From IMG/VR virus record IMGVR_UViG_3300044701_003953, positions 124,001-188,000 of that record: a stretch of 64,000 nucleotides of DNA; one strand, 5' to 3'. The translations under genes and the position numbers were made by a program. Positions 29,911 through 42,222 of this stretch are shown piece by piece. Every line of letters begins with the position of its first letter. The stretch's first letter is position 1. The notes under the pieces were generated by a model that made no database searches, was not told where the DNA came from, and was given only the letters and a program-made list of their open reading frames with translations.

Positions 29911-32571
29911 TTATTGCCACTCAAACAAGCTGTCGAAAGTTGTTTTAATCTGTGTGTGTTCTTCTATCTTCCAATCTAGCACACCTAGCAGATTCTCTAC
30001 CTTTTGATCCACGATAGTGGACTCCATGTTATCGTCGTCGAAGGGCAATTCTTTGAACCAATTTGGGATATGTAACTCGTCGGTAGGGTAAGCTACGGAA
30101 GTATATCCGAGTGGATTATCTCGGAGTTTACAGACGATGACTTTCATGCCGTCCACGATCTGCATGGAATAATTGTCTCCGTGCATTCTCTTGAGGTTAT
30201 TCCAATTCATACCGGCTCTCACGTGTCCTGGCATGTTGGCTTTGCCCAGGCGTGCTTCTTCGGCTGTGTATTTGGTCAAGTTGTTGACACGCTTGGGTGT
30301 ACCTTTTTCCCAAGCCGGCCTTTCTGTGAATAACAGTTTAAAGTCCCGGACCTTCTCAATGATCTCGTCCCTGCCGGATCCTGTTAGGACCATAGTGAGC
30401 AATTCGCTGAGGAACTCTTGTACCACCTTGGGGGTGTCTGAACGCTTGAGGTCCAAGCCCATGGCCTTGACCTTGCCGGGTTTGCCGTGCGTATCCAGTC
30501 GCACACCTTCGAGATCGTAGATCAGAACAGCGTAGCGTTTTTTCTTGATGAACAAGCCCTTGGATGCCACTAGTTCACGACCGGCAGCGATGATGGCCCC
30601 CATGTCTCTGGGACAATGGCAGGCACGTTCCATGAACGCCGGGAACGAAGCGTTTACAGAATCGGCGATAGTGTCATACAGTTGTACGCAGATCTCGCGA
30701 TTCCATTCCATGCGCCCGGCCTCGACCTCGTCCTTGATAGCGGGCCAAGCAGAGAAGTACACCGAGTCGGTGTCTCCGTAGATCACGCTCTTGCCCACGT
30801 GGTCATATTCGCCAGTGATACATTCATTGACGAACGAGTCCATGTGCTTGGCGATGATACGGCCTGTCAGTGTCGTTGATTGTCCGATACGATGGTCGAA
30901 AAAGCGACAGCCCGGATTCAAGATAGCGCCGTATAGCGAGTTCAAGTTAATCTTCTTGACTAACTGACGCTTGTCCCAGAACGCTTTGTCTTCGGGAGTC
31001 TCGGCATCTTTTTTCTTGGCTTGTAGTTCTTTGCGTTCAGCATACCATCTTTCTAGCAAACCGGGGACGATACCTTTAGCATCGTACTTGAAAATAGTGC
31101 CGTTGGCACTGAGAGTCCAGGGCTGATTACTGTCGAATACCAAGCGCCATACATTGGCTGCCGATGTGACATCCGTGGTCCCATCCTCCCAGTCGATGGT
31201 GATCTCGGTGCCAGGCTCCATATTCATGACTGATTGATATTCGAGACTTCCGAACATGTTTTCCCAGGCGTCTGCGAAACTGCTGCCGCCAGCCATCTTG
31301 TCCTTGATATATCGATCCGTCATGATAGGCCGCAGTTGGCCCACGATGGTCTCGGGTCCCATGTTTAAAGCACGGATGGTAGAAGGATACAGACTGTTCA
31401 AGTCGATGGCGCCGATGTATTCGTGTATGCCACGCTTGGGGTAGGCCACATAAGCACCCGCGGCTTGTGTCTCACCTTGGTCATCACGGCTGCGACGATT
31501 GGGCACCACCATGCCGCGTTGGTGTGCTTCATTGATGATGGCTTGTTCTGTGACTGCCACTGCGCCCATGGTAGTGGGCAGTAACACGGTGTTGTCGTGT
31601 GCTAGTTCGTTGGCTAGATCCAGGAACCGGAGCTTCTTGTCGATTTTGACCAAGAGCATGACGTCTTGTCGGTTGTAGTCGATGAACTTGGGGAAGTCTT
31701 TGTTGTAGAGTTGGTCCAGAGTTCCTTCATAGGCCACCTTTGATTCACCGACTTCGTATTCTCCGATGGCATCCAGACTATAGGAGTGTCGTTCTTCATA
31801 AGTGTATTTACGATACAGTTGCATATAGTCCATATGTACTCGACCGATGATGTCAAAGGTCAAGTTCTCAGCACCAAAACGTTCGAAGGTACGTTGCTTA
31901 GGATACTGTCCCCACAAGCAGAATCGTCGCGTGTCGTCTTTGCTGAGAACACGATTCACTCGCATTACGGTATACGGGATATCAAAGCCTTCTGAGTTCC
32001 ACCCTGTCAGGATATCTGCGTCTTCGATGAGATCAAGGAATGTATCTAACATATCCTCTTCTCGCTCAAACAAGAAGCAATTATCAAACCCATCACAGAT
32101 CTCTTGCGCCGTCTCCCAGGAATAACTCTTAGGCGGGACCACTAGCGTGACGAGTCGGTCCAACCAGTCTAAGTAAACCGTGATGGATGTGATAGGATTG
32201 AAAGGATCTTCGGGTTTGGAATATCCGCGTTCGGGGTCGAAGTCGACCTCGATGTCGAAGAAACAAGTCTGTAGTTTAGGAGATGTCGCTCCTAGATAGT
32301 TTTCTTCGAGGCAGCGGAAGATGGGATTGATATCTGATTCCCAGAGACGTTTTCCGGAGTTGATCCGCATCTCTTTGTGGAACTCTTTGCTGTTGCGTGT
32401 GGAAAATCTACTGACAGGAGTGCCGTAGATAGTACGGAACTTGCCTTTGTTATCGTCGTAATAGAACACATACTTGGCCGGGAACTCGCGATATTCGCGG
32501 CTACCGTTTATACGTTCCACGACATGGATAGTATCACGCTCTCTATCAAAGAGCGCATCAATATAACTCAT
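29911..32571 (-). CDS. Family B DNA polymerase (T4 gp43-like)
   Basis: Exo FFDIE, GWNSEGFD, YNRQD; pol DLNSLYPS, KINLNSLYG, YGDTDS, KKRY; no intein apparent (886 aa). Confidence 0.97.
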   Translation of the reverse strand: MSYIDALFDRERDTIHVVERINGSREYREFPAKYVFYYDDNKGKFRTIYGTPVSRFSTRNSKEFHKEMRINSGKRLWESDINPIFRCLEENYLGATSPKLQTCFFDIEVDFDPERGYSKPEDPFNPITSITVYLDWLDRLVTLVVPPKSYSWETAQEICDGFDNCFLFEREEDMLDTFLDLIEDADILTGWNSEGFDIPYTVMRVNRVLSKDDTRRFCLWGQYPKQRTFERFGAENLTFDIIGRVHMDYMQLYRKYTYEERHSYSLDAIGEYEVGESKVAYEGTLDQLYNKDFPKFIDYNRQDVMLLVKIDKKLRFLDLANELAHDNTVLLPTTMGAVAVTEQAIINEAHQRGMVVPNRRSRDDQGETQAAGAYVAYPKRGIHEYIGAIDLNSLYPSTIRALNMGPETIVGQLRPIMTDRYIKDKMAGGSSFADAWENMFGSLEYQSVMNMEPGTEITIDWEDGTTDVTSAANVWRLVFDSNQPWTLSANGTIFKYDAKGIVPGLLERWYAERKELQAKKKDAETPEDKAFWDKRQLVKKINLNSLYGAILNPGCRFFDHRIGQSTTLTGRIIAKHMDSFVNECITGEYDHVGKSVIYGDTDSVYFSAWPAIKDEVEAGRMEWNREICVQLYDTIADSVNASFPAFMERACHCPRDMGAIIAAGRELVASKGLFIKKKRYAVLIYDLEGVRLDTHGKPGKVKAMGLDLKRSDTPKVVQEFLSELLTMVLTGSGRDEIIEKVRDFKLLFTERPAWEKGTPKRVNNLTKYTAEEARLGKANMPGHVRAGMNWNNLKRMHGDNYSMQIVDGMKVIVCKLRDNPLGYTSVAYPTDELHIPNWFKELPFDDDNMESTIVDQKVENLLGVLDWKIEEHTQIKTTFDSLFEWQ

Positions 32572-32580
32572 AGTCCTCCT

Positions 32581-32640
32581 GTGGTTTATGGCCCACTGGC
32601 CGTTCTACATGCTGGTTGAGCCAGCGACTCTATTATAACA
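32581..32640 (-). promoter_or_regulatory. Extended -10 promoter and structured leader of the polymerase gene
   Basis: TGTTATAAT (32632-32640); hairpins GCUGG-CUCAA-CCAGC and GGCC-AGUG-GGCC ahead of the AGGAGG SD. Confidence 0.55.
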
Positions 32641-32647
32641 GGATCGT

Positions 32648-32908
32648 TTACAGCGTACGACCAACAGTCTCAAGGATGGTGGTCAACTCTTCGTGTTCGT
32701 GAGTGGTTTCACCGAACTTGCTCTTTTGTGCGATCTTGATCGCTTTTTTCAAGATAGCAGGTTTGACTTCTAGTTCTTCTGCGATGGCCTTGATGGTGTC
32801 ATTGAGGCCGGCGCTGAGGTCTTCGACTTCTTGTAGCACAGCGATGCCTTCATTGATGAGTTGTGTGAGCTTGGCTTTCTGTTCGCCGGAAAACATTCTT
32901 GAGGACAT
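32648..32908 (-). CDS. Small helical protein, T4 DsbA/GapR-like dsDNA-binding candidate
   Basis: 86 aa, LNDTIKAIAEELEVKPAILKKAIK pattern; AAGGAG RBS and TTGACT-17-TATACT promoter (32933-32961). Confidence 0.5.
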   Translation of the reverse strand: MSSRMFSGEQKAKLTQLINEGIAVLQEVEDLSAGLNDTIKAIAEELEVKPAILKKAIKIAQKSKFGETTHEHEELTTILETVGRTL

Positions 32909-32957: not shown

Positions 32958-34127
32958 TCAACCCTGGAAACTTTCTAATAGTTCCATAGCCGCTTCAGTG
33001 ACTCCGGGTTCCCAGGTATGGTATCCTACCCAATCATGATCGTAATACATCGGGGAGATCCACACTATTCTGCGCTCGAAATCGGGACTTTTAGATGCCA
33101 CTTTGATTTTTTGGTCGGCATAAGAACGATTGCCATCAAACTCGAAAATATATCGTTTAGCTTCGAGTTTCACACCGGCACGGCCCTTGTGTACATGTTC
33201 GAAATGATGCTGTAAATTACTGTAACTCCATTGCACGAATTCGTCTGTATTAAAATAACTGTACTGTGCATAATCACTATGGTGTTTTCTGTCGATCGGC
33301 TTCTTGAAATCTTTGCGAAGGTGCATAAATGGTCTCACTATTGCGGTAGCCCATTTAAAATTTACATAATGCCACCACCACCAATCTGAGATAGTCTTGA
33401 CATTTTCGGGATTGACTTCTATGAGGTTTTCGGTGATCCTTCTTACATACCATTGACCGAATTCTGGATCGGCATTGATGCTTTGATCACGATCAAAGAA
33501 ACTAGCGATGAGATGCTGATTGTCTTTAAATGGTAGGAGATGTTGATCGTTATTGACCAGATGCTTGAACGCCGGAAGAGTTGGCCCAAACACAGCGTCG
33601 CCTGGATCGCCATGTATGAGTATGTATTTTTCTAAGGTTTCATTGCACATCTCAAAATCTAACAGTTGTATGTATCGGAATCTTCCTGATATATATTTTC
33701 TAAAAAAGTCAAAGTTTTCGATGATCGATTCGGTGCTCATGACTATATCAATGATCCCTAAATCGGATTCGGAAAGATTCTTTAAGAATGAAACTAATAC
33801 AGCAGTAGAATCAATTCCGCCGCTCCACATCAGTGCTATTCTTTTGTTTGCCTTTTTAGCGTAGTTAAAGACTTCTATAGCTCGTTGATCAAACAAGTCG
33901 TGTAACTTATAGTCGACAAATTTAAGTTCAGGCATAGGATAATGATGATCGTATGGTGCTTGCCATGGAGTGGAAAAATTTCCAGTCCTGGCACGCAGAT
34001 CTTTAGCGCCTATCACCAAGTGCGCAAACTTTGACCATAGGTGCCCGCTTCGGTGCTTGATATCAAGTTCGGCTACTAGATGATTGTCAACAGCTAGGCT
34101 GTTTTTTATACCTTCAACATGGTTCAT
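32958..34127 (-). CDS. Asparagine-synthetase-C-terminal-like ATP pyrophosphatase (copy 2)
   Basis: PP-loop WSGGIDST; HGDPGDAVFG aligns with the AsnB GEGADE.FG motif; no N-terminal Cys glutaminase domain. Confidence 0.7.
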   Translation of the reverse strand: MNHVEGIKNSLAVDNHLVAELDIKHRSGHLWSKFAHLVIGAKDLRARTGNFSTPWQAPYDHHYPMPELKFVDYKLHDLFDQRAIEVFNYAKKANKRIALMWSGGIDSTAVLVSFLKNLSESDLGIIDIVMSTESIIENFDFFRKYISGRFRYIQLLDFEMCNETLEKYILIHGDPGDAVFGPTLPAFKHLVNNDQHLLPFKDNQHLIASFFDRDQSINADPEFGQWYVRRITENLIEVNPENVKTISDWWWWHYVNFKWATAIVRPFMHLRKDFKKPIDRKHHSDYAQYSYFNTDEFVQWSYSNLQHHFEHVHKGRAGVKLEAKRYIFEFDGNRSYADQKIKVASKSPDFERRIVWISPMYYDHDWVGYHTWEPGVTEAAMELLESFQG

Positions 34128-34804: not shown

Positions 34805-35965
34805 TTATCCTTTAAAAGTTTCAAGTCGATAACAAACTTGCTCATTGAGATAGTCTTCCCAACGAAAGTAGCCTTTCCAATTTCGATCAAAGCATATCGG
34901 GTTGTCGGATGAAGTGCGAGTAATGACGTCGGGTGGGGCACCGGCTAACTTTGGTTTATTCTCAAAATAGAATTCATTTTTATCGAGCTCGAAAATATAT
35001 CGTTTGGCTTCGATCTTGTGAGACTTCATGCCGTCCTTTAAAAGATTTTTGAGATTGCTATAACTCCAATGCTGGAAGTATTCGGTGTTATAGAAAGTAT
35101 TTTCTGCGAACGTTTTTTGATTTTCGATGCTGATGCCTTTTTTTACATCTTTTTGGGAAAAGATAAAAGGTCTCTGGCAGCTGAATTCCCATTTGTAATT
35201 GTAATATGTCCACCACCACCAATCACTGACGGTAGTCACGTTGTCGGGGTTCACTTCTTCGATGTTATCGGTTATTTTTTTGACTATCCAATTTCCAAAA
35301 TTTGGAACAGAGTACGGCAGATGTTTACCGGGCTGACAGAGATCAATGAGTTTTTTAAAATGTTTTTTATAACTTTCTTTATGTTCGCCACTGATTATCA
35401 ACTCTCGATATGCAACAGTAGTTGGGCCGTAGAGACAATCTGCTGGGTCGCCATGCACTAAAATATTTTTATCAAGAAAATCGTCATTAAGGTCTAACAA
35501 CGAGTAATGGAAACATTTTATTTTATTAGAAATAAATTTCATATAAAATTCAAAATTTTCCACCATTGAGCCAGTGTTCATCACCACAGTCAATAATTCG
35601 AGATCTGTGCTACTTAGATTTTTAATAAAAGACGCCAAGACTGCGGTAGAGTCAATACCACCACTCCAAAGTACAAATATTTTTTTATTTGTTTTTTTGG
35701 CCACAGAAAATATTTCTAATGCTCTTCGATCTAATAGATCTGAGAGAGAATCGTTGATGAATTTGAACTCGGGCGCAGAATAAAAACTATTGCTAGGAGC
35801 ATTCCACGGAGTAGTGAAAGTACCCAATCGTGCTCTTAGGTCGTGTACTCCGATAAAACTATCTAGAGTCGATTTCCACATTTTTCCGTAGGGATTTTTT
35901 AGGTTGCCGGCAATGTTGAAGTTGCGCACGTCAACCATGATGGAATCTTCTATTTTTATAGTCAT
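34805..35965 (-). CDS. Asparagine-synthetase-C-terminal-like ATP pyrophosphatase (copy 1)
   Basis: WSGGIDST, HGDPADCLYG, SDWWWW, WSYSNL, EAKRYIFE shared with copy 2. Confidence 0.7.
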   Translation of the reverse strand: MTIKIEDSIMVDVRNFNIAGNLKNPYGKMWKSTLDSFIGVHDLRARLGTFTTPWNAPSNSFYSAPEFKFINDSLSDLLDRRALEIFSVAKKTNKKIFVLWSGGIDSTAVLASFIKNLSSTDLELLTVVMNTGSMVENFEFYMKFISNKIKCFHYSLLDLNDDFLDKNILVHGDPADCLYGPTTVAYRELIISGEHKESYKKHFKKLIDLCQPGKHLPYSVPNFGNWIVKKITDNIEEVNPDNVTTVSDWWWWTYYNYKWEFSCQRPFIFSQKDVKKGISIENQKTFAENTFYNTEYFQHWSYSNLKNLLKDGMKSHKIEAKRYIFELDKNEFYFENKPKLAGAPPDVITRTSSDNPICFDRNWKGYFRWEDYLNEQVCYRLETFKG

Positions 35966-36828: not shown

Positions 36829-38112
36829 TCAGTGGAACTGCTCTTCCTCTGTGGAACCTTTGAGGGCTTGTGTGGATGCGTCAGCTTCGATGGTCGTAGT
36901 GACAGCGTCGAAGTAACCTGTGCCTACTTCCCTTTGATGCTTAACAGCTTCAAAACCACGGCTCGCATCCGCGAACTCACGTTCTTGTAACTCCACGAAA
37001 GCAGACATACCGTTCCTAGCATAACCATGAGCAAGGTCAAACATGCCATGATTAAGAGCATGGAATCCAGCAAGTGTGATGAATTGAAAACGGTAGCCCA
37101 TTGCTCCAAGTTCACGTTGGAAACGGCTAATTGTGTCTGCATCTAAGTTCTTCCTCCAGTTGAATGATGGCGAGCAGTTGTAGGCTAACATCTTACCTGG
37201 ATGGTGCTTGTGTACTTGCTCTGCGAATTCCTTCGCGAATTGTAAGTCGGGCTTTCCTGTTTCACACCACACGAGGTCTGCGTAAGGTGCGTAGGCGACG
37301 GCTCTGCTGACTGCTTGATCGATTCCGTTACGGGTTCTGTAGAATCCTTCAACAGTTCTTTCACCAGTAAGGAAAGGCTTGTCGTTGTCATCAATATCGC
37401 TAGTGATAAGGTCACCGGCTTCGGCATCAGTTCGTGCAATAACAAGAGTAGGCACGCCCATAACATCACTAGCGAGGCGAGCGGCAACAAGTTTATTGAT
37501 GGCTTCTCTGGTTGGTACAAGGACTTTTCCTCCCATGTGTCCGCATTTTTTAGCAGACGCTAATTGGTCTTCGAAGTGTACACCAGCGGCACCAGCTTCG
37601 ATCATGGCCTTCATCAGTTCAAATGCGTTTAACACGCCACCAAAGCCGGCTTCGGCATCAGCTACGATGGGTGCGAAGAAGTCGTGATCATCTTTACCTT
37701 CCATCCACTGTATCTGATCGGCACGACGAAACGTGTTGTTGATCTTGCGGACCACGGCGGGCACAGAGTTCACTGGATACAAGCTCTGATCAGGATACAT
37801 CTCTCCGGCCAAGTTGGCATCACCTGCCACTTGCCAACCGCTTAGGTATATGGCTTTGAGTCCTGCTTTGACTTGCTGTAACGCCTGCATGCCTGTCAAC
37901 GCACCCAAGGTGTTGACATAGTCCTCAGTGGTCAGTAGGTTCCATAATTTCTTGGCTTGGTCTATCGCGAACTGATCGGGATATACACGACTGCCTTGCA
38001 AGCGAACTACATCATCGGCGGTGTAGTCTCGTTTGATGCCCAACCACCTTGGGTTGGTACTCCAATCCTGTTGTATCTGATAGGCTTTCCAGCTACGAGT
38101 GTTTTCAGACAT
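36829..38112 (-). CDS. aceA: Isocitrate lyase
   Basis: KKCGHMGGK signature, [43 protein letters not shown]; GAGGAG RBS. Confidence 0.98.
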
Positions 38113-38138
38113 TAGTTGATCTCCTCAGTGTTCTTAGA

Positions 38139-38146
38139 TATTTATA
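38139..38146 (-). promoter_or_regulatory. T4-type late promoter upstream of aceA
   Basis: Exact TATAAATA about 27 nt before the ATG. Confidence 0.7.
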
Positions 38147-38230
38147 TTGCTCTGCAATAGCAAATTTCAATGTTGGCCGTACGGGTTTTTTCCGAACCCA
38201 GGAGCAGGCCATACCAAATATAGATCAGGG

Positions 38231-38383
38231 TTACTGTTCTGCTGATTCTCGGCAGCTAGGACACCCGCATTCTGTACAGGAGTCGCAGTCGAGGCAACTG
38301 TGTCCGCAGTGTTTTGTGCATCCACAGGGGCATTTTGGCAAGAGTCGTTGGTAGGCTTCGATATCATCGATGTAATTCTCCAT
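38231..38383 (-). CDS. Metallothionein-like Cys-rich protein, 50 aa (absent from ORF track)
   Basis: MENYIDDIEAYQRLLPKCPCGCTKHCGHSCLDCDSCTECGCPSCRESAEQ: 10 Cys + 2 His; AAGGAG RBS; TAAATA at 38402-38407. Confidence 0.75.
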   Translation of the reverse strand: MENYIDDIEAYQRLLPKCPCGCTKHCGHSCLDCDSCTECGCPSCRESAEQ

Positions 38384-38423
38384 GTCCGGCTCCTTTTTGT
38401 TTATTTACCGGGACACTGGACTA

Positions 38424-38963
38424 TTACTCGACTTTACCCCAACCCGTTTTGGCACGGATGGCAAAGGCCAACTCTCGCATACGACCATATTCGGGACTGC
38501 CCTTGGGATGTGGCCCTGACTTTTTAAGTGCGTTGTAGGCTTTGACAAGTTCCGATTTGGTCTTGCCAGCATACTTGCCACGCTCTTCGGGGCCGACTTG
38601 TGTGTCTGTGCCCCATTTTTCTGCTAATGCCTTAGGGTTCTTGGCTAGAGCGATGCGATCGGCGAAAGTGACACGATCCTTGGGCGGGGCCAGTTTCGCG
38701 AGTTGTTCGCGGTCTAAGGCTTCTTGGGGTTTCTTTTCAGGGAGACCTTTATGTGGTGTCTTGGCGAAATCCTTGACATCACTTTTCTTCATGGTGCGAG
38801 CAGTTTGTTTGAGTTCCTTGCTGGCGCCTGGAATACGCTCGCCTTTTTGCATGGCATGCACCATGCCCATGTAACGCTGTTGGGCTTTGCTGACAGCACG
38901 CTCGGCCAGAGCGATTGCAGCACGCAGTTCGCGTGCCTCGTTGATGAATTCTTGGCTTTTCAT
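38424..38963 (-). CDS. DUF3008-like basic protein, candidate internal head protein
   Basis: AVSKAQQRYMGMVHAMQKG and VKDFAKTPHKGLPEKK; N-terminus MKSQEFINEA; AAGGAG RBS. Confidence 0.6.
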   Translation of the reverse strand: MKSQEFINEARELRAAIALAERAVSKAQQRYMGMVHAMQKGERIPGASKELKQTARTMKKSDVKDFAKTPHKGLPEKKPQEALDREQLAKLAPPKDRVTFADRIALAKNPKALAEKWGTDTQVGPEERGKYAGKTKSELVKAYNALKKSGPHPKGSPEYGRMRELAFAIRAKTGWGKVE

Positions 38964-38981: not shown

Positions 38982-39416
38982 TTATTTGAGACTTGCTCTC
39001 AACATCCAGGAGTGTTTGCGGTGTGCGTCCATGCGCTCGGCCAGGAAGTTGGCAAGACCGTCTTCCCCAGCTTCAGTGGCCATGTCAAATACACGCTTAA
39101 GGATCTTGACCATCTTGTCAGAATCTTCTAGCAGTTCTTGGCACATGTCTTCAGCGGCTAGGATAGCAGTCTCGTCATCGACCATGCTGAGCATGGAGAA
39201 GCGGGTGAACGAGCCCGGGGTATAAGAATCTAGCTTGCGTATGTTTTCCGCGAACAGATCGATGCTACCGTATACTTCTTCGTAGATACCTCCAAACAGT
39301 TCGTGGAACTGTGCGAAGTGTATGCCTTCCACGTTCCAGTGGAAGTTGTGTGCTTTTAGATAAAACGCGAACTCGGATGAGAACGCGATCTTCATGGCTT
39401 TTTTAAGCTCGTCCAT
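38982..39416 (-). CDS. dps: Dps/ferritin-like protein
   Basis: KAHNFHWNVEG..F...HELF...YEE...D..AE; HRKHSWML. Confidence 0.93.
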   Translation of the reverse strand: MDELKKAMKIAFSSEFAFYLKAHNFHWNVEGIHFAQFHELFGGIYEEVYGSIDLFAENIRKLDSYTPGSFTRFSMLSMVDDETAILAAEDMCQELLEDSDKMVKILKRVFDMATEAGEDGLANFLAERMDAHRKHSWMLRASLK

Positions 39417-40586: not shown

Positions 40587-40892
40587 TTAAATAGAAAACT
40601 CGAAATTTGCTGGTTGATCATTGATACGCACATTACTGATTCTCAGCATATCTCGTGGATCATTAAGTTTTTCTACCTTTAAGCGATGCGCCCCTGGCCC
40701 CAGCTTTACTGTGATCAGTTCTTCAACATAAGTGTCTTCGTGTTGCCAGACATAGGTACGTTCAGTCAAAAGATCCGAGTCCACATATATGCGATAGGCA
40801 GGTCGATACACATAAGCACCAGTTAACCCATGGGGTATATCTTCGCCGGACCAGCGTACATCAATACGTATCTCTATCTGCCGGTCATTCAT
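40587..40892 (-). CDS. Hypothetical beta-rich protein
   Basis: 101-aa ORF overlapping upstream stop. Confidence 0.6.
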   Translation of the reverse strand: MNDRQIEIRIDVRWSGEDIPHGLTGAYVYRPAYRIYVDSDLLTERTYVWQHEDTYVEELITVKLGPGAHRLKVEKLNDPRDMLRISNVRINDQPANFEFSI

Positions 40893-42222
40893 CGCTGAAA
40901 ATCCCTGGTGGGATTCCTCGTGCTCCTACTCCGCCTTTTTTCCTAAGAGCGGATAGGTCTCTGTAAGCCTTTAGCAAAGCATCGAGCATGACGGGCATCG
41001 GAGATTTCTGTAACAGATATTGTGCCTGACGAACTTGGTCGGCATCCATGCTAGACATCCTGTCTGACAGATCTTTAAAGTTATTTGCCAGTTTTTTATG
41101 TAATGTCGCGATAGTCAGGCGTCCGTACCCGGGTATCAATACTTCACTGTCGGACATTGGATTTGTGGGATCCTTAGCGTATAAACTTTCGATAAGGTTG
41201 AACGCTTTCATCATCTTTTTCAATGTATTTGTTTTTACATCAACAGTCATCGAAGTGCTGTATCTTGGATCGCGGGCCATCTTTTTATTTGATGCTACGA
41301 CACCGACTCCGGCCGCATCTTCATTAGAATGACGTCGATTTAGCCAATCTTTTTCTTGGTGGGCATCTCGACCGTTTCTTCCTAATATCCTGCTGGCATT
41401 CCGGTCCCCGCGAGCTATGGCCCGGATTTCTTGATCTATCTCGCCCTTTACTGAGTCTTTGCTGATATTTTGAATATTTTTCGCTGTGCGTAACGCGATT
41501 AATGCATCACGTGCTGTACCGGCATCAGTGGTGGCACAGCCCGGAGTTCCTGCGACGCATGCGGCCACTGCCGCGGCACCGAGAGCTTGCTTCCATCCTT
41601 CGGTAACGACCAGTTTCTGGTCCATGATGTGCTTTGCTTCTTCACTATAGCGTCCAAACAAGTCGGCGATTATCTGCTTACGAGTCGCAGGGTCGGCATC
41701 TTTGTACTGCTGTCGCACTTCTGTTGCTGACCGCATAGGCGCCCCAAGAACGGTGAAGTCCACCGTAGGTACCGTTAGGATATAGCCCGTCTTGTCGAAT
41801 GTATCGGCATCTTTTAGATCTGCGGGCAGAGGCTGGAAATATGTTGGGCTACCGTCTTTTTTAGTTCCCATACGGAAACGAGGATCTTCGGCCATGTCTT
41901 TTTCGCTGACCGCGAAGATCAATATAGTCGATTCTGCTGGATAATTTGCTGTTAGCTCAGGGACCTTGTAGGGTTCACGGCTTTCGATCACACGATCCAT
42001 TGGCACCCCTGTGAGCGCCATGAACACGGATTTGTCTGAAAAGTTGAAAGGACTCTTGGGGGGATCTACTTTGTTGCTGGTAGCGATGTAGACGCGATCT
42101 CGGCCAAATTTCTTGACGAGATAGTCATACACCGCTTTATGCCCTTTGTGGAAGGGTTGGAAGCGTCCGGGGTAGACTACGACAAGATTTTGCGTGTCTT
42201 CAAATAAATCAGCAACAAACAT
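40885..42222 (-). CDS. HxGH nucleotidyltransferase (cytidyltransferase-like) with extra C-terminal modules
   Basis: YPGRFQPFHKGH, MRSATEVR; ATAAATA at 42244-42250. Confidence 0.8.
   Translation of the reverse strand: MFVADLFEDTQNLVVVYPGRFQPFHKGHKAVYDYLVKKFGRDRVYIATSNKVDPPKSPFNFSDKSVFMALTGVPMDRVIESREPYKVPELTANYPAESTILIFAVSEKDMAEDPRFRMGTKKDGSPTYFQPLPADLKDADTFDKTGYILTVPTVDFTVLGAPMRSATEVRQQYKDADPATRKQIIADLFGRYSEEAKHIMDQKLVVTEGWKQALGAAAVAACVAGTPGCATTDAGTARDALIALRTAKNIQNISKDSVKGEIDQEIRAIARGDRNASRILGRNGRDAHQEKDWLNRRHSNEDAAGVGVVASNKKMARDPRYSTSMTVDVKTNTLKKMMKAFNLIESLYAKDPTNPMSDSEVLIPGYGRLTIATLHKKLANNFKDLSDRMSSMDADQVRQAQYLLQKSPMPVMLDALLKAYRDLSALRKKGGVGARGIPPGIFSDE

What the first reader, a model, noticed from the sequence alone, without database searches (positions are those of the whole stretch)
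38231..38407. Hidden phage metallothionein-like gene near dps
The ORF track shows a different-frame 66-aa ORF here. The frame with an AAGGAG SD and TAAATA motif instead encodes 50 aa with 10 Cys and 2 His within 27 residues (CPCGC..HC.H.C..C..C..CGC..C). That density is typical of metallothioneins. Together with Dps about 600 bp away, it suggests a late metal/oxidative-stress module (inference).
Basis: partly seen in the sequence, partly recalled or inferred. Interest (0 to 1): 0.7.

Follow-up and report, generated by a model that had tools for sequence, protein, structure and literature searches.

The report
Phage metal-cluster mini-protein, metallothionein-like
A real, conserved 50-residue gene of an uncultured freshwater jumbo phage encodes a very cysteine-rich protein that almost certainly wraps a cluster of metal ions as a metallothionein does, but it belongs to no known family and is not a fixed partner of the nearby Dps gene.

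Summary

The gene is real. Relatives occur in 63 IMG/VR phage contigs (46 distinct coding sequences) and in 43 clusters of a 1.84-billion-protein library, all of them stand-alone proteins of 48-88 aa. The Cys frame is open in every relative. The overlapping 66-aa ORF carries stops in 44 of 46. Synonymous sites are saturated (pS 0.89 against pN 0.33).

Ten ligand positions are invariant (nine Cys and H25), and position 22 alternates between Cys and His. That gives 11 ligands in 27 residues, too dense for separate zinc fingers. The count equals the metallothionein alpha-domain (M4Cys11) and SmtA (Zn4Cys9His2).

No Pfam, PHROG, NCBIfam, PDB or fold match exists. I read it as a new, phage-specific, metallothionein-like metal-thiolate family whose metal binding is untested.

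The Dps "module" is not supported as a conserved unit. None of the 80 closest DNA-polymerase relatives has this gene, although 19 of the 30 with enough upstream sequence have Dps. One complete 364-kb phage has the gene but no Dps. The gene lies in a variable island between Dps and the DNA-polymerase block. Late expression is plausible.

The parts
38231..38383 (-). Coding sequence of the 50-aa Cys/His-rich mini-protein. AlphaFold2 predicts an N-terminal helix (about residues 7-14), a ligand core at residues 18-44 and a C-terminal helix (about residues 42-49).
   Evidence: Searches give the ORF. Searches give the homologues. Searches show that the frame is conserved and under purifying selection. 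Searches give AlphaFold2 models with pLDDT 68-70.
38390..38395 (-). Shine-Dalgarno sequence AAGGAG, 6 nt upstream of the ATG.
   Evidence: One search shows the sequence. A GGAG-type motif lies in the last 20 nt before the start in 36 of 45 distinct homologous upstream regions.
38402..38407 (-). TAAATA motif, a T4-type late-promoter-like element that starts 24 nt upstream of the ATG.
   Evidence: The motif lies within 60 nt upstream of 17 of 90 crude ORF calls, against 1.5 expected. It sits at -23 to -26 in 5 of 45 distinct homologous upstream regions. The genome has a weak gp55-like match. Promoter activity is inferred.
38167..38367 (-). Overlapping 66-aa ORF in another frame. It is not a gene.
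   Evidence: This frame has stops in 44 of 46 distinct homologous sequences and is open only in the window and its closest relative L002. It has no Pfam match.
38424..38963 (-). Upstream neighbour, a 179-aa protein with a DUF3008 domain. Context only.
   Evidence: PF11450 at E 1.2e-5, plus several PHROGs of unknown function. It is also present between Dps and the Cys gene in L002.
38982..39416 (-). Dps/ferritin-like gene of 144 aa. It is a resident of this genome region whether or not the Cys gene is present.
   Evidence: PF00210 at E 2.8e-21. It is present in 19 of 30 close relatives that lack the Cys gene.
36829..38112 (-). Downstream neighbour, isocitrate lyase of 427 aa, with TATAAATA 32 nt upstream of its start. 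It is cargo of the same variable island.
   Evidence: PF00463 at E 8e-108. The motif is shown. ICL is also near the Cys gene in L002, L006, L007/L008 and L016.
29911..32908 (-). Synteny anchor: an 86-aa phrog_639-like regulator (32648-32908) followed by family B DNA polymerase (29911-32571).
   Evidence: In many related loci the Cys gene lies 1-3 genes upstream of this same pair.

Best explanation
window:38231-38383 (-) is a genuine accessory gene of an uncultured freshwater jumbo phage. By DNA polymerase the phage is related to Sinorhizobium phage Phosso and Agrobacterium phage Atu_ph07.

The gene encodes a soluble, cytoplasmic, strongly acidic protein of 50 aa. Eleven conserved ligands lie within 27 residues: C18, C20, C/H22, H25, C26, C30, C33, C36, C39, C41 and C44. 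That spacing is too tight for independent zinc fingers. I infer that they share metals through bridging thiolates in one polynuclear cluster, most likely 3-4 Zn(II) or Cd(II), or alternatively a Cu(I) cluster. The two short flanking helices would pack against that cluster. This is metallothionein chemistry in a new, phage-specific sequence family.

The gene is probably transcribed from its own TAAATA (T4-late-type) element and translated from a strong Shine-Dalgarno sequence. I infer that the protein acts during infection as a high-capacity sink or buffer for Zn, Cu and oxidants.

Shown here: the gene is real, it is under purifying selection, the ligand pattern is conserved, it has translation signals, and it is distributed among phages. 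Inferred: cluster formation, the identity of the metal, expression timing and the physiological role.
For: - **Conservation.** Relatives occur in 63 IMG/VR loci, giving 46 distinct coding sequences, all open in this frame. A profile search finds 43 clusters, all 49-88 aa.
- **Selection.** Mean pN is 0.33 against a saturated pS of 0.89. Median dN/dS is 0.14 for the 40 unsaturated pairs.
- **Independent strain.** A roughly 90%-identical contig from a subsurface metagenome keeps the ICL-Cys gene-DUF3008 order. All three listed changes at Cys codons (C36, C39, C41) are synonymous.
- **Ligands.** In 85 sequences C18, C20, H25, C26, C30, C33, C36, C39, C41 and C44 are invariant. Position 22 is Cys in 38 and His in 8 of the 46 distinct sequences. 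A Cys/His exchange is typical of a metal ligand and not of a disulfide partner.
- **Location in the cell.** There is no hydrophobic run longer than 5 residues, so no signal peptide. Median net charge is -5.
- **Structure.** The AlphaFold2 core has no regular secondary structure between two helices, as expected for a metal-organised fold.
- **Nearest sequence.** The only PDB sequence near the profile is the human MT1A beta-domain (E 0.95, compositional). The long-form relatives share its C-x-C-x2-C-x-C-x2-C spacing.
- **Stoichiometry precedent.** SmtA binds 4 Zn (PMC10612145). That it does so with 11 ligands, and that the MT alpha-domain is M4Cys11, is established knowledge.
- **Expression signals.**
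Against: - No metal-binding data exist, and the one attempt to model the protein with Zn was not run.
- No metallothionein model matches. The only trace is one of 48 members at E 0.007 to PF12749, which is not significant for that many tests.
- No cellular homologue was found, which is unlike a host-derived auxiliary metabolic gene.
- Several non-ligand positions are strongly conserved: G27, S29, D34, E38 and the N-terminal helix (Y4, D6, D7, Y11, R13, L14). In many clades the gene sits in fixed synteny with two unknown phage proteins. Both features fit a specific binding role at least as well as bulk metal buffering.
- The high negative charge is unlike the Lys-rich animal metallothioneins.
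- No RNA run was listed, so expression is unconfirmed.
Confidence: 0.42

Rival explanations
1. The metal cluster is only a scaffold. The protein is a zinc-cluster-stabilised small effector or regulator that binds a specific host or phage protein through its conserved acidic N-terminal helix and surface. It could, for example, act on replication or transcription machinery or on a host defence. It would not be a metal store.
For: - The family is phage-specific, with no cellular relative found.
- Non-ligand residues and spacing are strictly conserved despite saturated synonymous divergence.
- Synteny next to two unknown phage proteins recurs: the 207-aa c1 lies directly downstream in 24 loci and the 140-aa, 7-Cys c3 is adjacent in 20. 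The gene also lies just upstream of a phrog_639-like regulator and DNA polymerase.
- The family is consistently acidic. Acidity is common in phage inhibitor and mimic proteins, which is general knowledge.
Against: - The ligand density (11 in 27 residues) exceeds that of the structural zinc domains I know and equals metallothionein domains.
- About half the positions between the ligands are freely variable.
- The N-terminal helix is missing or different in the deeper branches.
- c1, c3 and c20 are absent from the 207-kb record that holds this window, although that record is only 59% complete.
- The gene is absent from all 80 closest DNA-polymerase relatives, so it is not a core function.
Confidence: 0.35
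2. It is an iron-sulfur or redox protein: a small ferredoxin-like or thiol-redox carrier linked to the iron and oxidative-stress genes nearby (Dps, ICL).
For: The protein is rich in Cys. Dps lies 599 bp away. In some related loci the neighbouring gene belongs to phrog_3704, which some records label 'ferredoxin'.
Against: - No CxxCxxCxxxCP or other Fe-S spacing is present in the sequence.
- C-x-C-x-C and C-x-C-x2-C runs are too tight for cubane ligation, and an invariant His with Cys/His exchange fits Zn better. Both points rest on established knowledge.
- The 'ferredoxin' label on phrog_3704 is inconsistent, since the same protein is also called PurM or regulator, and that protein is absent here.
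- Dps linkage is not conserved.
Confidence: 0.07
3. It is a disulfide-rich secreted peptide, or a precursor of a ribosomally made, modified peptide.
For: The product is small and Cys-rich.
Against: - There is no signal peptide or hydrophobic segment.
- The number of invariant Cys is odd (9), and position 22 alternates Cys/His.
- No radical-SAM, lanthipeptide or other maturase domain was found in the conserved neighbours that were scanned.
Confidence: 0.04
4. It is not a gene. The Cys-rich frame is a chance or antisense artefact, and the 66-aa ORF or nothing at all is expressed.
For: Antisense frames of real genes can reach 9-10 Cys in 27 residues. No RNA run was listed.
Against: - 46 distinct homologues are all open in this frame with a conserved start and Shine-Dalgarno sequence.
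- The alternative frames are broken in 89-100% of them.
- Purifying selection is strong.
Confidence: 0.01

Closest known systems
Bacterial metallothionein SmtA/BmtA (Pfam PF02069), Zn4Cys9His2
   Same: Both are single-domain proteins of about 50-56 aa, and both include His among the ligands. The number of conserved ligands is the same, 11 (9-10 Cys plus 1-2 His). Relatives with His at position 22 have exactly Cys9His2. Both tolerate aromatic residues and some secondary structure. SmtA binds 4 Zn (PMC10612145).
   Different: There is no sequence or profile similarity. The ligand spacing differs. The AlphaFold2 model shows two helices and no GATA-like beta-hairpin. This family is known only from phages and is strongly acidic.
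Vertebrate metallothionein domains (beta M3Cys9, alpha M4Cys11)
   Same: The Cys density is the same. The common long form of the family ends with the spacing C-x-C-x2-C-x-C-x2-C found in the MT1A beta-domain. The alpha-domain also uses 11 ligands for 4 metals, which is established knowledge.
   Different: The PDB profile hit is not significant and is driven by composition (E 0.95, bias 18). This family has an invariant His, aromatic residues, acidic rather than Lys-rich flanks, and a conserved non-Cys N-terminal helix.
Structural Zn3Cys9 cluster domains (CXC/tesmin, pre-SET)
   Same: These are short domains in which closely spaced C-x-C and C-x2-C motifs share zinc through bridging thiolates, and the cluster serves as a scaffold. 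This comparison rests on my own knowledge.
   Different: No Pfam hit to these families was found at E up to 10. They are domains of large eukaryotic proteins and bind DNA or histones. This protein stands alone, is acidic and belongs to phages.
Copper thioneins (MymT, CUP1) and Cu(I)-cluster motifs
   Same: They are small and contain C-x-C, C-x2-C and C-x-H motifs. MymT is about the same length. This comparison rests on my own knowledge.
   Different: No sequence similarity was detected. The invariant His and the conserved Asp/Glu fit Zn(II) better. The metal was not tested.

Membership tests
Metallothionein (operational definition) | Low molecular mass (under about 10 kDa) and a very high Cys content with C-x-C and C-x2-C motifs | tested here: met
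   The protein has 50 aa and 10 Cys (20%), with C-x-C-x-C and C-x2-C-x-C-x2-C motifs. Across the family the median is 10 Cys in 55 aa.
Metallothionein (operational definition) | Binds several metal ions per chain in metal-thiolate clusters | not testable with these tools
   This is inferred only from 11 conserved ligands in 27 residues. The Zn co-folding job was not run by the tool.
Metallothionein (operational definition) | Role in metal homeostasis, detoxification or oxidant scavenging, and induction by metals | not testable with these tools
   No expression or phenotype data exist, and no RNA run was listed.
Bacterial metallothionein SmtA/BmtA (PF02069) | Match to the family model | tested here: not met
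   No member of 48 matches PF02069 at E up to 10. No NCBIfam match was found. The family profile does not reach any bacterial metallothionein chain in the PDB sequence set at E up to 10.
Bacterial metallothionein SmtA/BmtA (PF02069) | GATA-like zinc-finger fold around the cluster | tested here: inconclusive
   The AlphaFold2 models (pLDDT 68-70) show two helices and a coil core with no hairpin. They have no fold match in PDB or the Atlas. Models made without metal are unreliable for such folds.
Eukaryotic metallothioneins (PF00131, PF12749 and others) | Match to a family model | tested here: not met
   One of 48 members matches PF12749 at E 0.0071, and no other member matches any of these families. 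The PDB profile hit to MT1A has E 0.95 with high compositional bias.
Single zinc finger or zinc ribbon | Four ligands in two knuckles around one Zn | tested here: not met
   Eleven conserved ligands have a mean spacing under 3 residues. No zinc-finger family model matches significantly.
Disulfide-rich secreted peptide | Signal peptide and an even set of invariant Cys | tested here: not met
   There is no hydrophobic run longer than 5 residues. Nine Cys are invariant and one position alternates Cys/His.
Ferredoxin-type Fe-S protein | CxxCxxCxxxCP or an equivalent cluster-binding spacing | tested here: not met
   The motif is absent from the sequence, and no Fe-S family match was found.
Conserved Dps plus Cys-protein stress module | The two genes co-occur and stay adjacent across relatives | tested here: not met
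   Dps lies within 5 kb in only 6 of 63 homologous loci. None of the 80 closest DNA-polymerase relatives has the Cys gene, while 19 of the 30 with at least 5 kb upstream have Dps. Complete genome G001 has the gene and no ferritin-like gene, and in G002 the two lie about 208 kb apart.
T4-type late gene | A TATAAATA-like -10 element upstream and a gp55-type sigma factor in the genome | tested here: inconclusive
   TAAATA starts 24 nt upstream of the ATG. The motif is enriched upstream of genes, 17 of 90 against 1.5 expected. The gp55 match is weak (E 8e-6, 36% identity over 69 residues). There are no transcript data.

The most novel reading that the evidence does not exclude
This is the first metallothionein lineage that arose within viruses. 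On this reading it is a de novo, phage-specific metal-thiolate cluster protein that environmental jumbo phages use to take control of the infected cell's zinc or copper pool. It could supply phage metalloenzymes, starve zinc-dependent host functions, or blunt copper and oxidant stress. The gene would be exchanged among phages as cargo of a variable island next to the replication genes.
Probability: 0.3. Interest if true: 0.75.

Novelty: new variant of a known kind. Interest (0 to 1): 0.55.

Why it matters
Metallothioneins are polyphyletic and are defined by their chemistry. No virus-specific family has been described. A full-text search found only passing mentions of host-type metallothionein genes in viromes.

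This family is small, abundant in environmental jumbo phages and easy to synthesise. It therefore offers a direct test of whether phages manipulate trace-metal pools during infection. It would also add a new minimal metal-cluster fold.

There is a practical point for annotation as well. The gene is hidden behind a longer spurious ORF and is labelled 'hypothetical' wherever a source names it.

Tried and rejected
- **Family libraries.** Pfam, PHROGs and NCBIfam scans of the protein and of 48-85 family members gave no significant match.
- **Solved structures by sequence.** The PDB search with the family profile gave only a compositional hit to MT1A at E 0.95.
- **Fold searches.** Foldseek against PDB, VIA-align against 48,161 chains and the ESM Atlas shape search gave nothing usable. 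The Atlas feature search returned only unnamed clusters.
- **Zn co-folding.** The complex-prediction job with four Zn ions was not folded by the tool, so it is no evidence either way.
- **Cultured phages.** tblastn gave only noise. The family profile finds nothing in Sinorhizobium phage Phosso or Agrobacterium phage Atu_ph07.
- **Cellular genomes.** The scan of 185,579 species genomes found no relative. It used only two peptide patterns, so its sensitivity is limited.
- **Transcripts.** No RNA run was listed.
- **Neighbour leads.** The conserved neighbours c1, c3 and c20 have no informative Pfam, PDB or Atlas match. c20 is the variously mislabelled 'PurM/ferredoxin' protein of cyanophages and is unrelated to c1. 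None of the three is in this genome record.
- **Terminator.** No intrinsic terminator or notable RNA structure lies between the gene and ICL.
- **Dps module.** Rejected as a conserved unit.

Full report
**The observation**

The minus strand of window 38231-38383 carries a 50-codon ORF with an ATG start and a TAA stop. Residues 18-44 contain 10 Cys and 2 His. AAGGAG lies at 38390-38395, six bases before the ATG. TAAATA lies at 38402-38407. A 66-aa ORF in another frame overlaps at 38167-38367. Dps (38982-39416, PF00210, E 2.8e-21) ends 599 bp upstream.

No other stop-free 27-residue window in the six frames exceeds 6 Cys, and base shuffles never exceeded 8. Density alone is not proof, however. 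Antisense frames of genuine genes in related contigs reach 9-10 Cys.

**Is it a gene?**

Yes. A word-indexed search found four relatives at 62-71% identity. A profile search of 1.84 billion representative proteins found 43 clusters, all 49-88 aa and matched along most of their length. A scan of IMG/VR found 63 phage contigs that encode a relative. These give 46 distinct coding sequences.

- All 46 are open in the Cys frame.
- The frame of the 66-aa ORF has stops in 44 of 46. It is open only in the window and in its nearest relative.
- The three antisense frames are broken in 89-98% of them.
- Mean pN is 0.33 against a saturated pS of 0.89. For the 40 unsaturated pairs the median dN/dS is 0.14.
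- A GGAG-type ribosome-binding site precedes the start in 36 of 45 distinct upstream regions.

Contigs of the two source-like freshwater runs reproduce the stretch without any difference. A subsurface metagenome holds a contig about 90% identical across ICL, this gene and the DUF3008 gene. In that contig the three listed changes at Cys codons (C36, C39, C41) are synonymous. The listed non-synonymous changes fall at variable positions or in the tail. No RNA run was listed, so transcription itself remains unobserved.

**What the protein looks like**

In an 85-sequence alignment C18, C20, H25, C26, C30, C33, C36, C39, C41 and C44 are invariant. Among the 46 distinct sequences:

- Position 22 is Cys in 38 and His in 8.
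- E38 is Glu in 44 and Asp in 2.
- D34 is Asp in 40.
- G27 and S29 are common.

Sequence variants change in concert. Relatives with C-x2-C-x-H at the start also have C-D-H-C later.

A Cys/His exchange at a fixed position, an odd number of invariant Cys, the lack of any hydrophobic segment and a median net charge of -5 point to a soluble cytoplasmic metal-binding protein and away from a disulfide-bonded one.

Eleven conserved ligands in 27 residues cannot form separate four-ligand zinc fingers. The count and density equal those of the metallothionein alpha-domain (M4Cys11) and of SmtA (Zn4Cys9His2). Both comparisons are established knowledge, and SmtA's four Zn are confirmed in PMC10612145. I therefore infer a single polynuclear metal-thiolate cluster.

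AlphaFold2 gives moderate confidence (pLDDT 68 with 48 sequences, 70 with 85). It predicts helices at about residues 7-14 and 42-49 and an irregular core. That is what one expects when the organising metal is missing from the model.

**Comparison with known families**

Nothing matches. Pfam, PHROGs and NCBIfam give no significant hit for the protein or for 48-85 family members. The only trace is one member at E 0.007 to PF12749, which is not significant across that many tests.

The family profile against all PDB sequences gives one hit, the human MT1A beta-domain, at E 0.95 with heavy compositional bias. That alignment does show that the common long form of the family ends in the same C-x-C-x2-C-x-C-x2-C spacing.

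Fold searches by Foldseek, by VIA-align against 48,161 chains and by Atlas shape give nothing. The attempt to co-fold with Zn was not run by the tool.

The protein is therefore metallothionein-like in composition and probable chemistry. It is not a member of any described metallothionein family.

**The phage and the neighbourhood**

The window is part of a 207.5-kb IMG/VR record estimated at 59% complete and recovered from freshwater metagenomes. Its family B DNA polymerase (29911-32571) is 51% identical to that of Sinorhizobium phage Phosso and 49% to Agrobacterium phage Atu_ph07. Weaker matches lead to the GAP32 and CBB group of jumbo phages.

Of 90 crude ORF calls, 82 lie on the minus strand. 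TAAATA lies within 60 nt upstream of 17 of them, against 1.5 expected. These include ICL (a full TATAAATA), the cytidylyltransferase-like gene and this gene. T4 gp55 finds a weak match elsewhere in the genome (E 8e-6). A T4-type late promoter is therefore a reasonable inference, but it is unproven.

In relatives the Cys gene usually lies in one of two blocks:

- virion protein, c3, Cys gene, c1, SNase-like nuclease;
- nucleotidyltransferase, c5, Cys gene, c3, c1, phrog_639-like regulator, DNA polymerase.

The window keeps the 'Cys gene ... regulator, DNA polymerase' order. ICL, a 245-aa protein and two paralogous PP-loop proteins are inserted in between. c1, c3 and c20 have no informative match and are absent from this genome record.

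**The Dps 'module'**

Dps lies within 5 kb of the gene in 6 of 63 homologous loci, on either side of it. ICL does so in 5.

The 80 closest relatives by DNA polymerase (78-86% identity) settle the matter. None has the Cys gene, by motif search or by tblastn. Yet 19 of the 30 with at least 5 kb of upstream sequence carry Dps 0.8-5.5 kb upstream of the regulator-polymerase pair.

A complete 364-kb phage has the Cys gene and no ferritin-like gene. Another has Dps about 208 kb away. The family is absent from Phosso and Atu_ph07.

Dps is thus a resident of this region. The Cys gene, together with the DUF3008 gene, ICL and the PP-loop paralogues, is cargo of a variable island between Dps and the replication genes. 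A functional synergy in this particular phage cannot be excluded, but no conserved module exists.

**Mechanism and rivals**

My best reading (0.42) is a metallothionein-like cluster protein, made from its own late-type promoter and a strong ribosome-binding site, that acts as a Zn, Cu and oxidant sink during infection.

The main rival (0.35) is that the cluster merely stabilises a small acidic effector that binds a specific partner. Several observations favour it: restriction to phages, the conserved non-ligand residues and N-terminal helix, and the fixed synteny with c1 and c3. Against it stand the extreme ligand density, the variable inter-ligand positions, the loss of the N-terminal helix in deep branches and the patchy, accessory distribution.

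The Fe-S reading (0.07), the disulfide or modified-peptide reading (0.04) and the artefact reading (0.01) each fail specific tests listed in the report sections.

**Novelty**

All named copies are 'hypothetical protein'. Full-text searches found no paper on a phage-specific metallothionein. They found only mentions of metallothionein genes among viral auxiliary genes.

I rate this as a new variant of a known kind: metallothionein-type chemistry in a new, virus-restricted family. Interest is moderate because the biochemistry is still inferred.

Noticed in passing
window 36829-38112 (-): The phage encodes an isocitrate lyase of 427 aa (PF00463, E 8e-108) with a perfect TATAAATA 32 nt upstream of its start. 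No malate synthase was noticed among the neighbouring genes that were scanned. ICL in huge phages has been reported: 98 genes in 98 genomes (bioRxiv 10.1101/2025.02.27.640493).
   Followed up: partly
window 38982-39416 (-); loci L073-L152: Dps/ferritin-like is a conserved resident upstream of the regulator-DNA polymerase pair in this abundant phage clade. It is present in 19 of 30 close relatives with enough upstream sequence, at 60-75% identity to the window's Dps. At least 598 IMG/VR contigs carry a related polymerase.
   Followed up: partly
window 32958-34127 (-) and 34805-35965 (-): Two tandem paralogues (42% identical, E 6e-111) carry an SGGIDST PP-loop motif and a weak phrog_424 'PAPS reductase' match. 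Their function is unknown. They are present in some relatives and absent in others.
   Followed up: partly
whole window: TAAATA is strongly enriched just upstream of gene starts: 17 of 90 crude ORF calls against 1.5 expected, and 38 occurrences on both strands in total. Of the 90 calls, 82 are on the minus strand. T4 gp55 finds a weak match at G000:C1:69637-69837, outside the window.
   Followed up: partly
window 40885-42222 (-): A 445-aa protein has an N-terminal cytidylyltransferase-like (NMNAT-type) domain (PF01467, E 1.9e-5) and a long extension of unknown function. TAAATA lies 27 nt upstream of its start.
   Followed up: no
L015:93-512 and relatives (c3): A second phage-specific Cys-rich family (about 140 aa, 7 Cys, no Pfam, PHROG or PDB match) lies directly beside the Cys mini-protein gene in 20 related loci. 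A 207-aa unknown protein (c1) lies directly downstream in 24 loci. The three may work together. None of the three partners is in this genome record.
   Followed up: partly
L042:4348-4980 and relatives (c20, phrog_3704): A 211-aa protein conserved in cyanophages and pelagiphages is annotated inconsistently in GenBank as PurM, ferredoxin or transcriptional regulator. It has no Pfam or PDB match, so the labels look unreliable.
   Followed up: partly
window 37640-38642: A subsurface metagenome (run X5) holds a contig about 90% identical that spans ICL, the Cys gene and the DUF3008 gene. In it the stop codon of the Cys gene is changed (TAA to CAA), which would lengthen the tail. Small insertions are placed at the start codon and in the leader just upstream of it.
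   Followed up: no
window 1-64000: ARAGORN finds no tRNA gene in the 64-kb window.
   Followed up: yes
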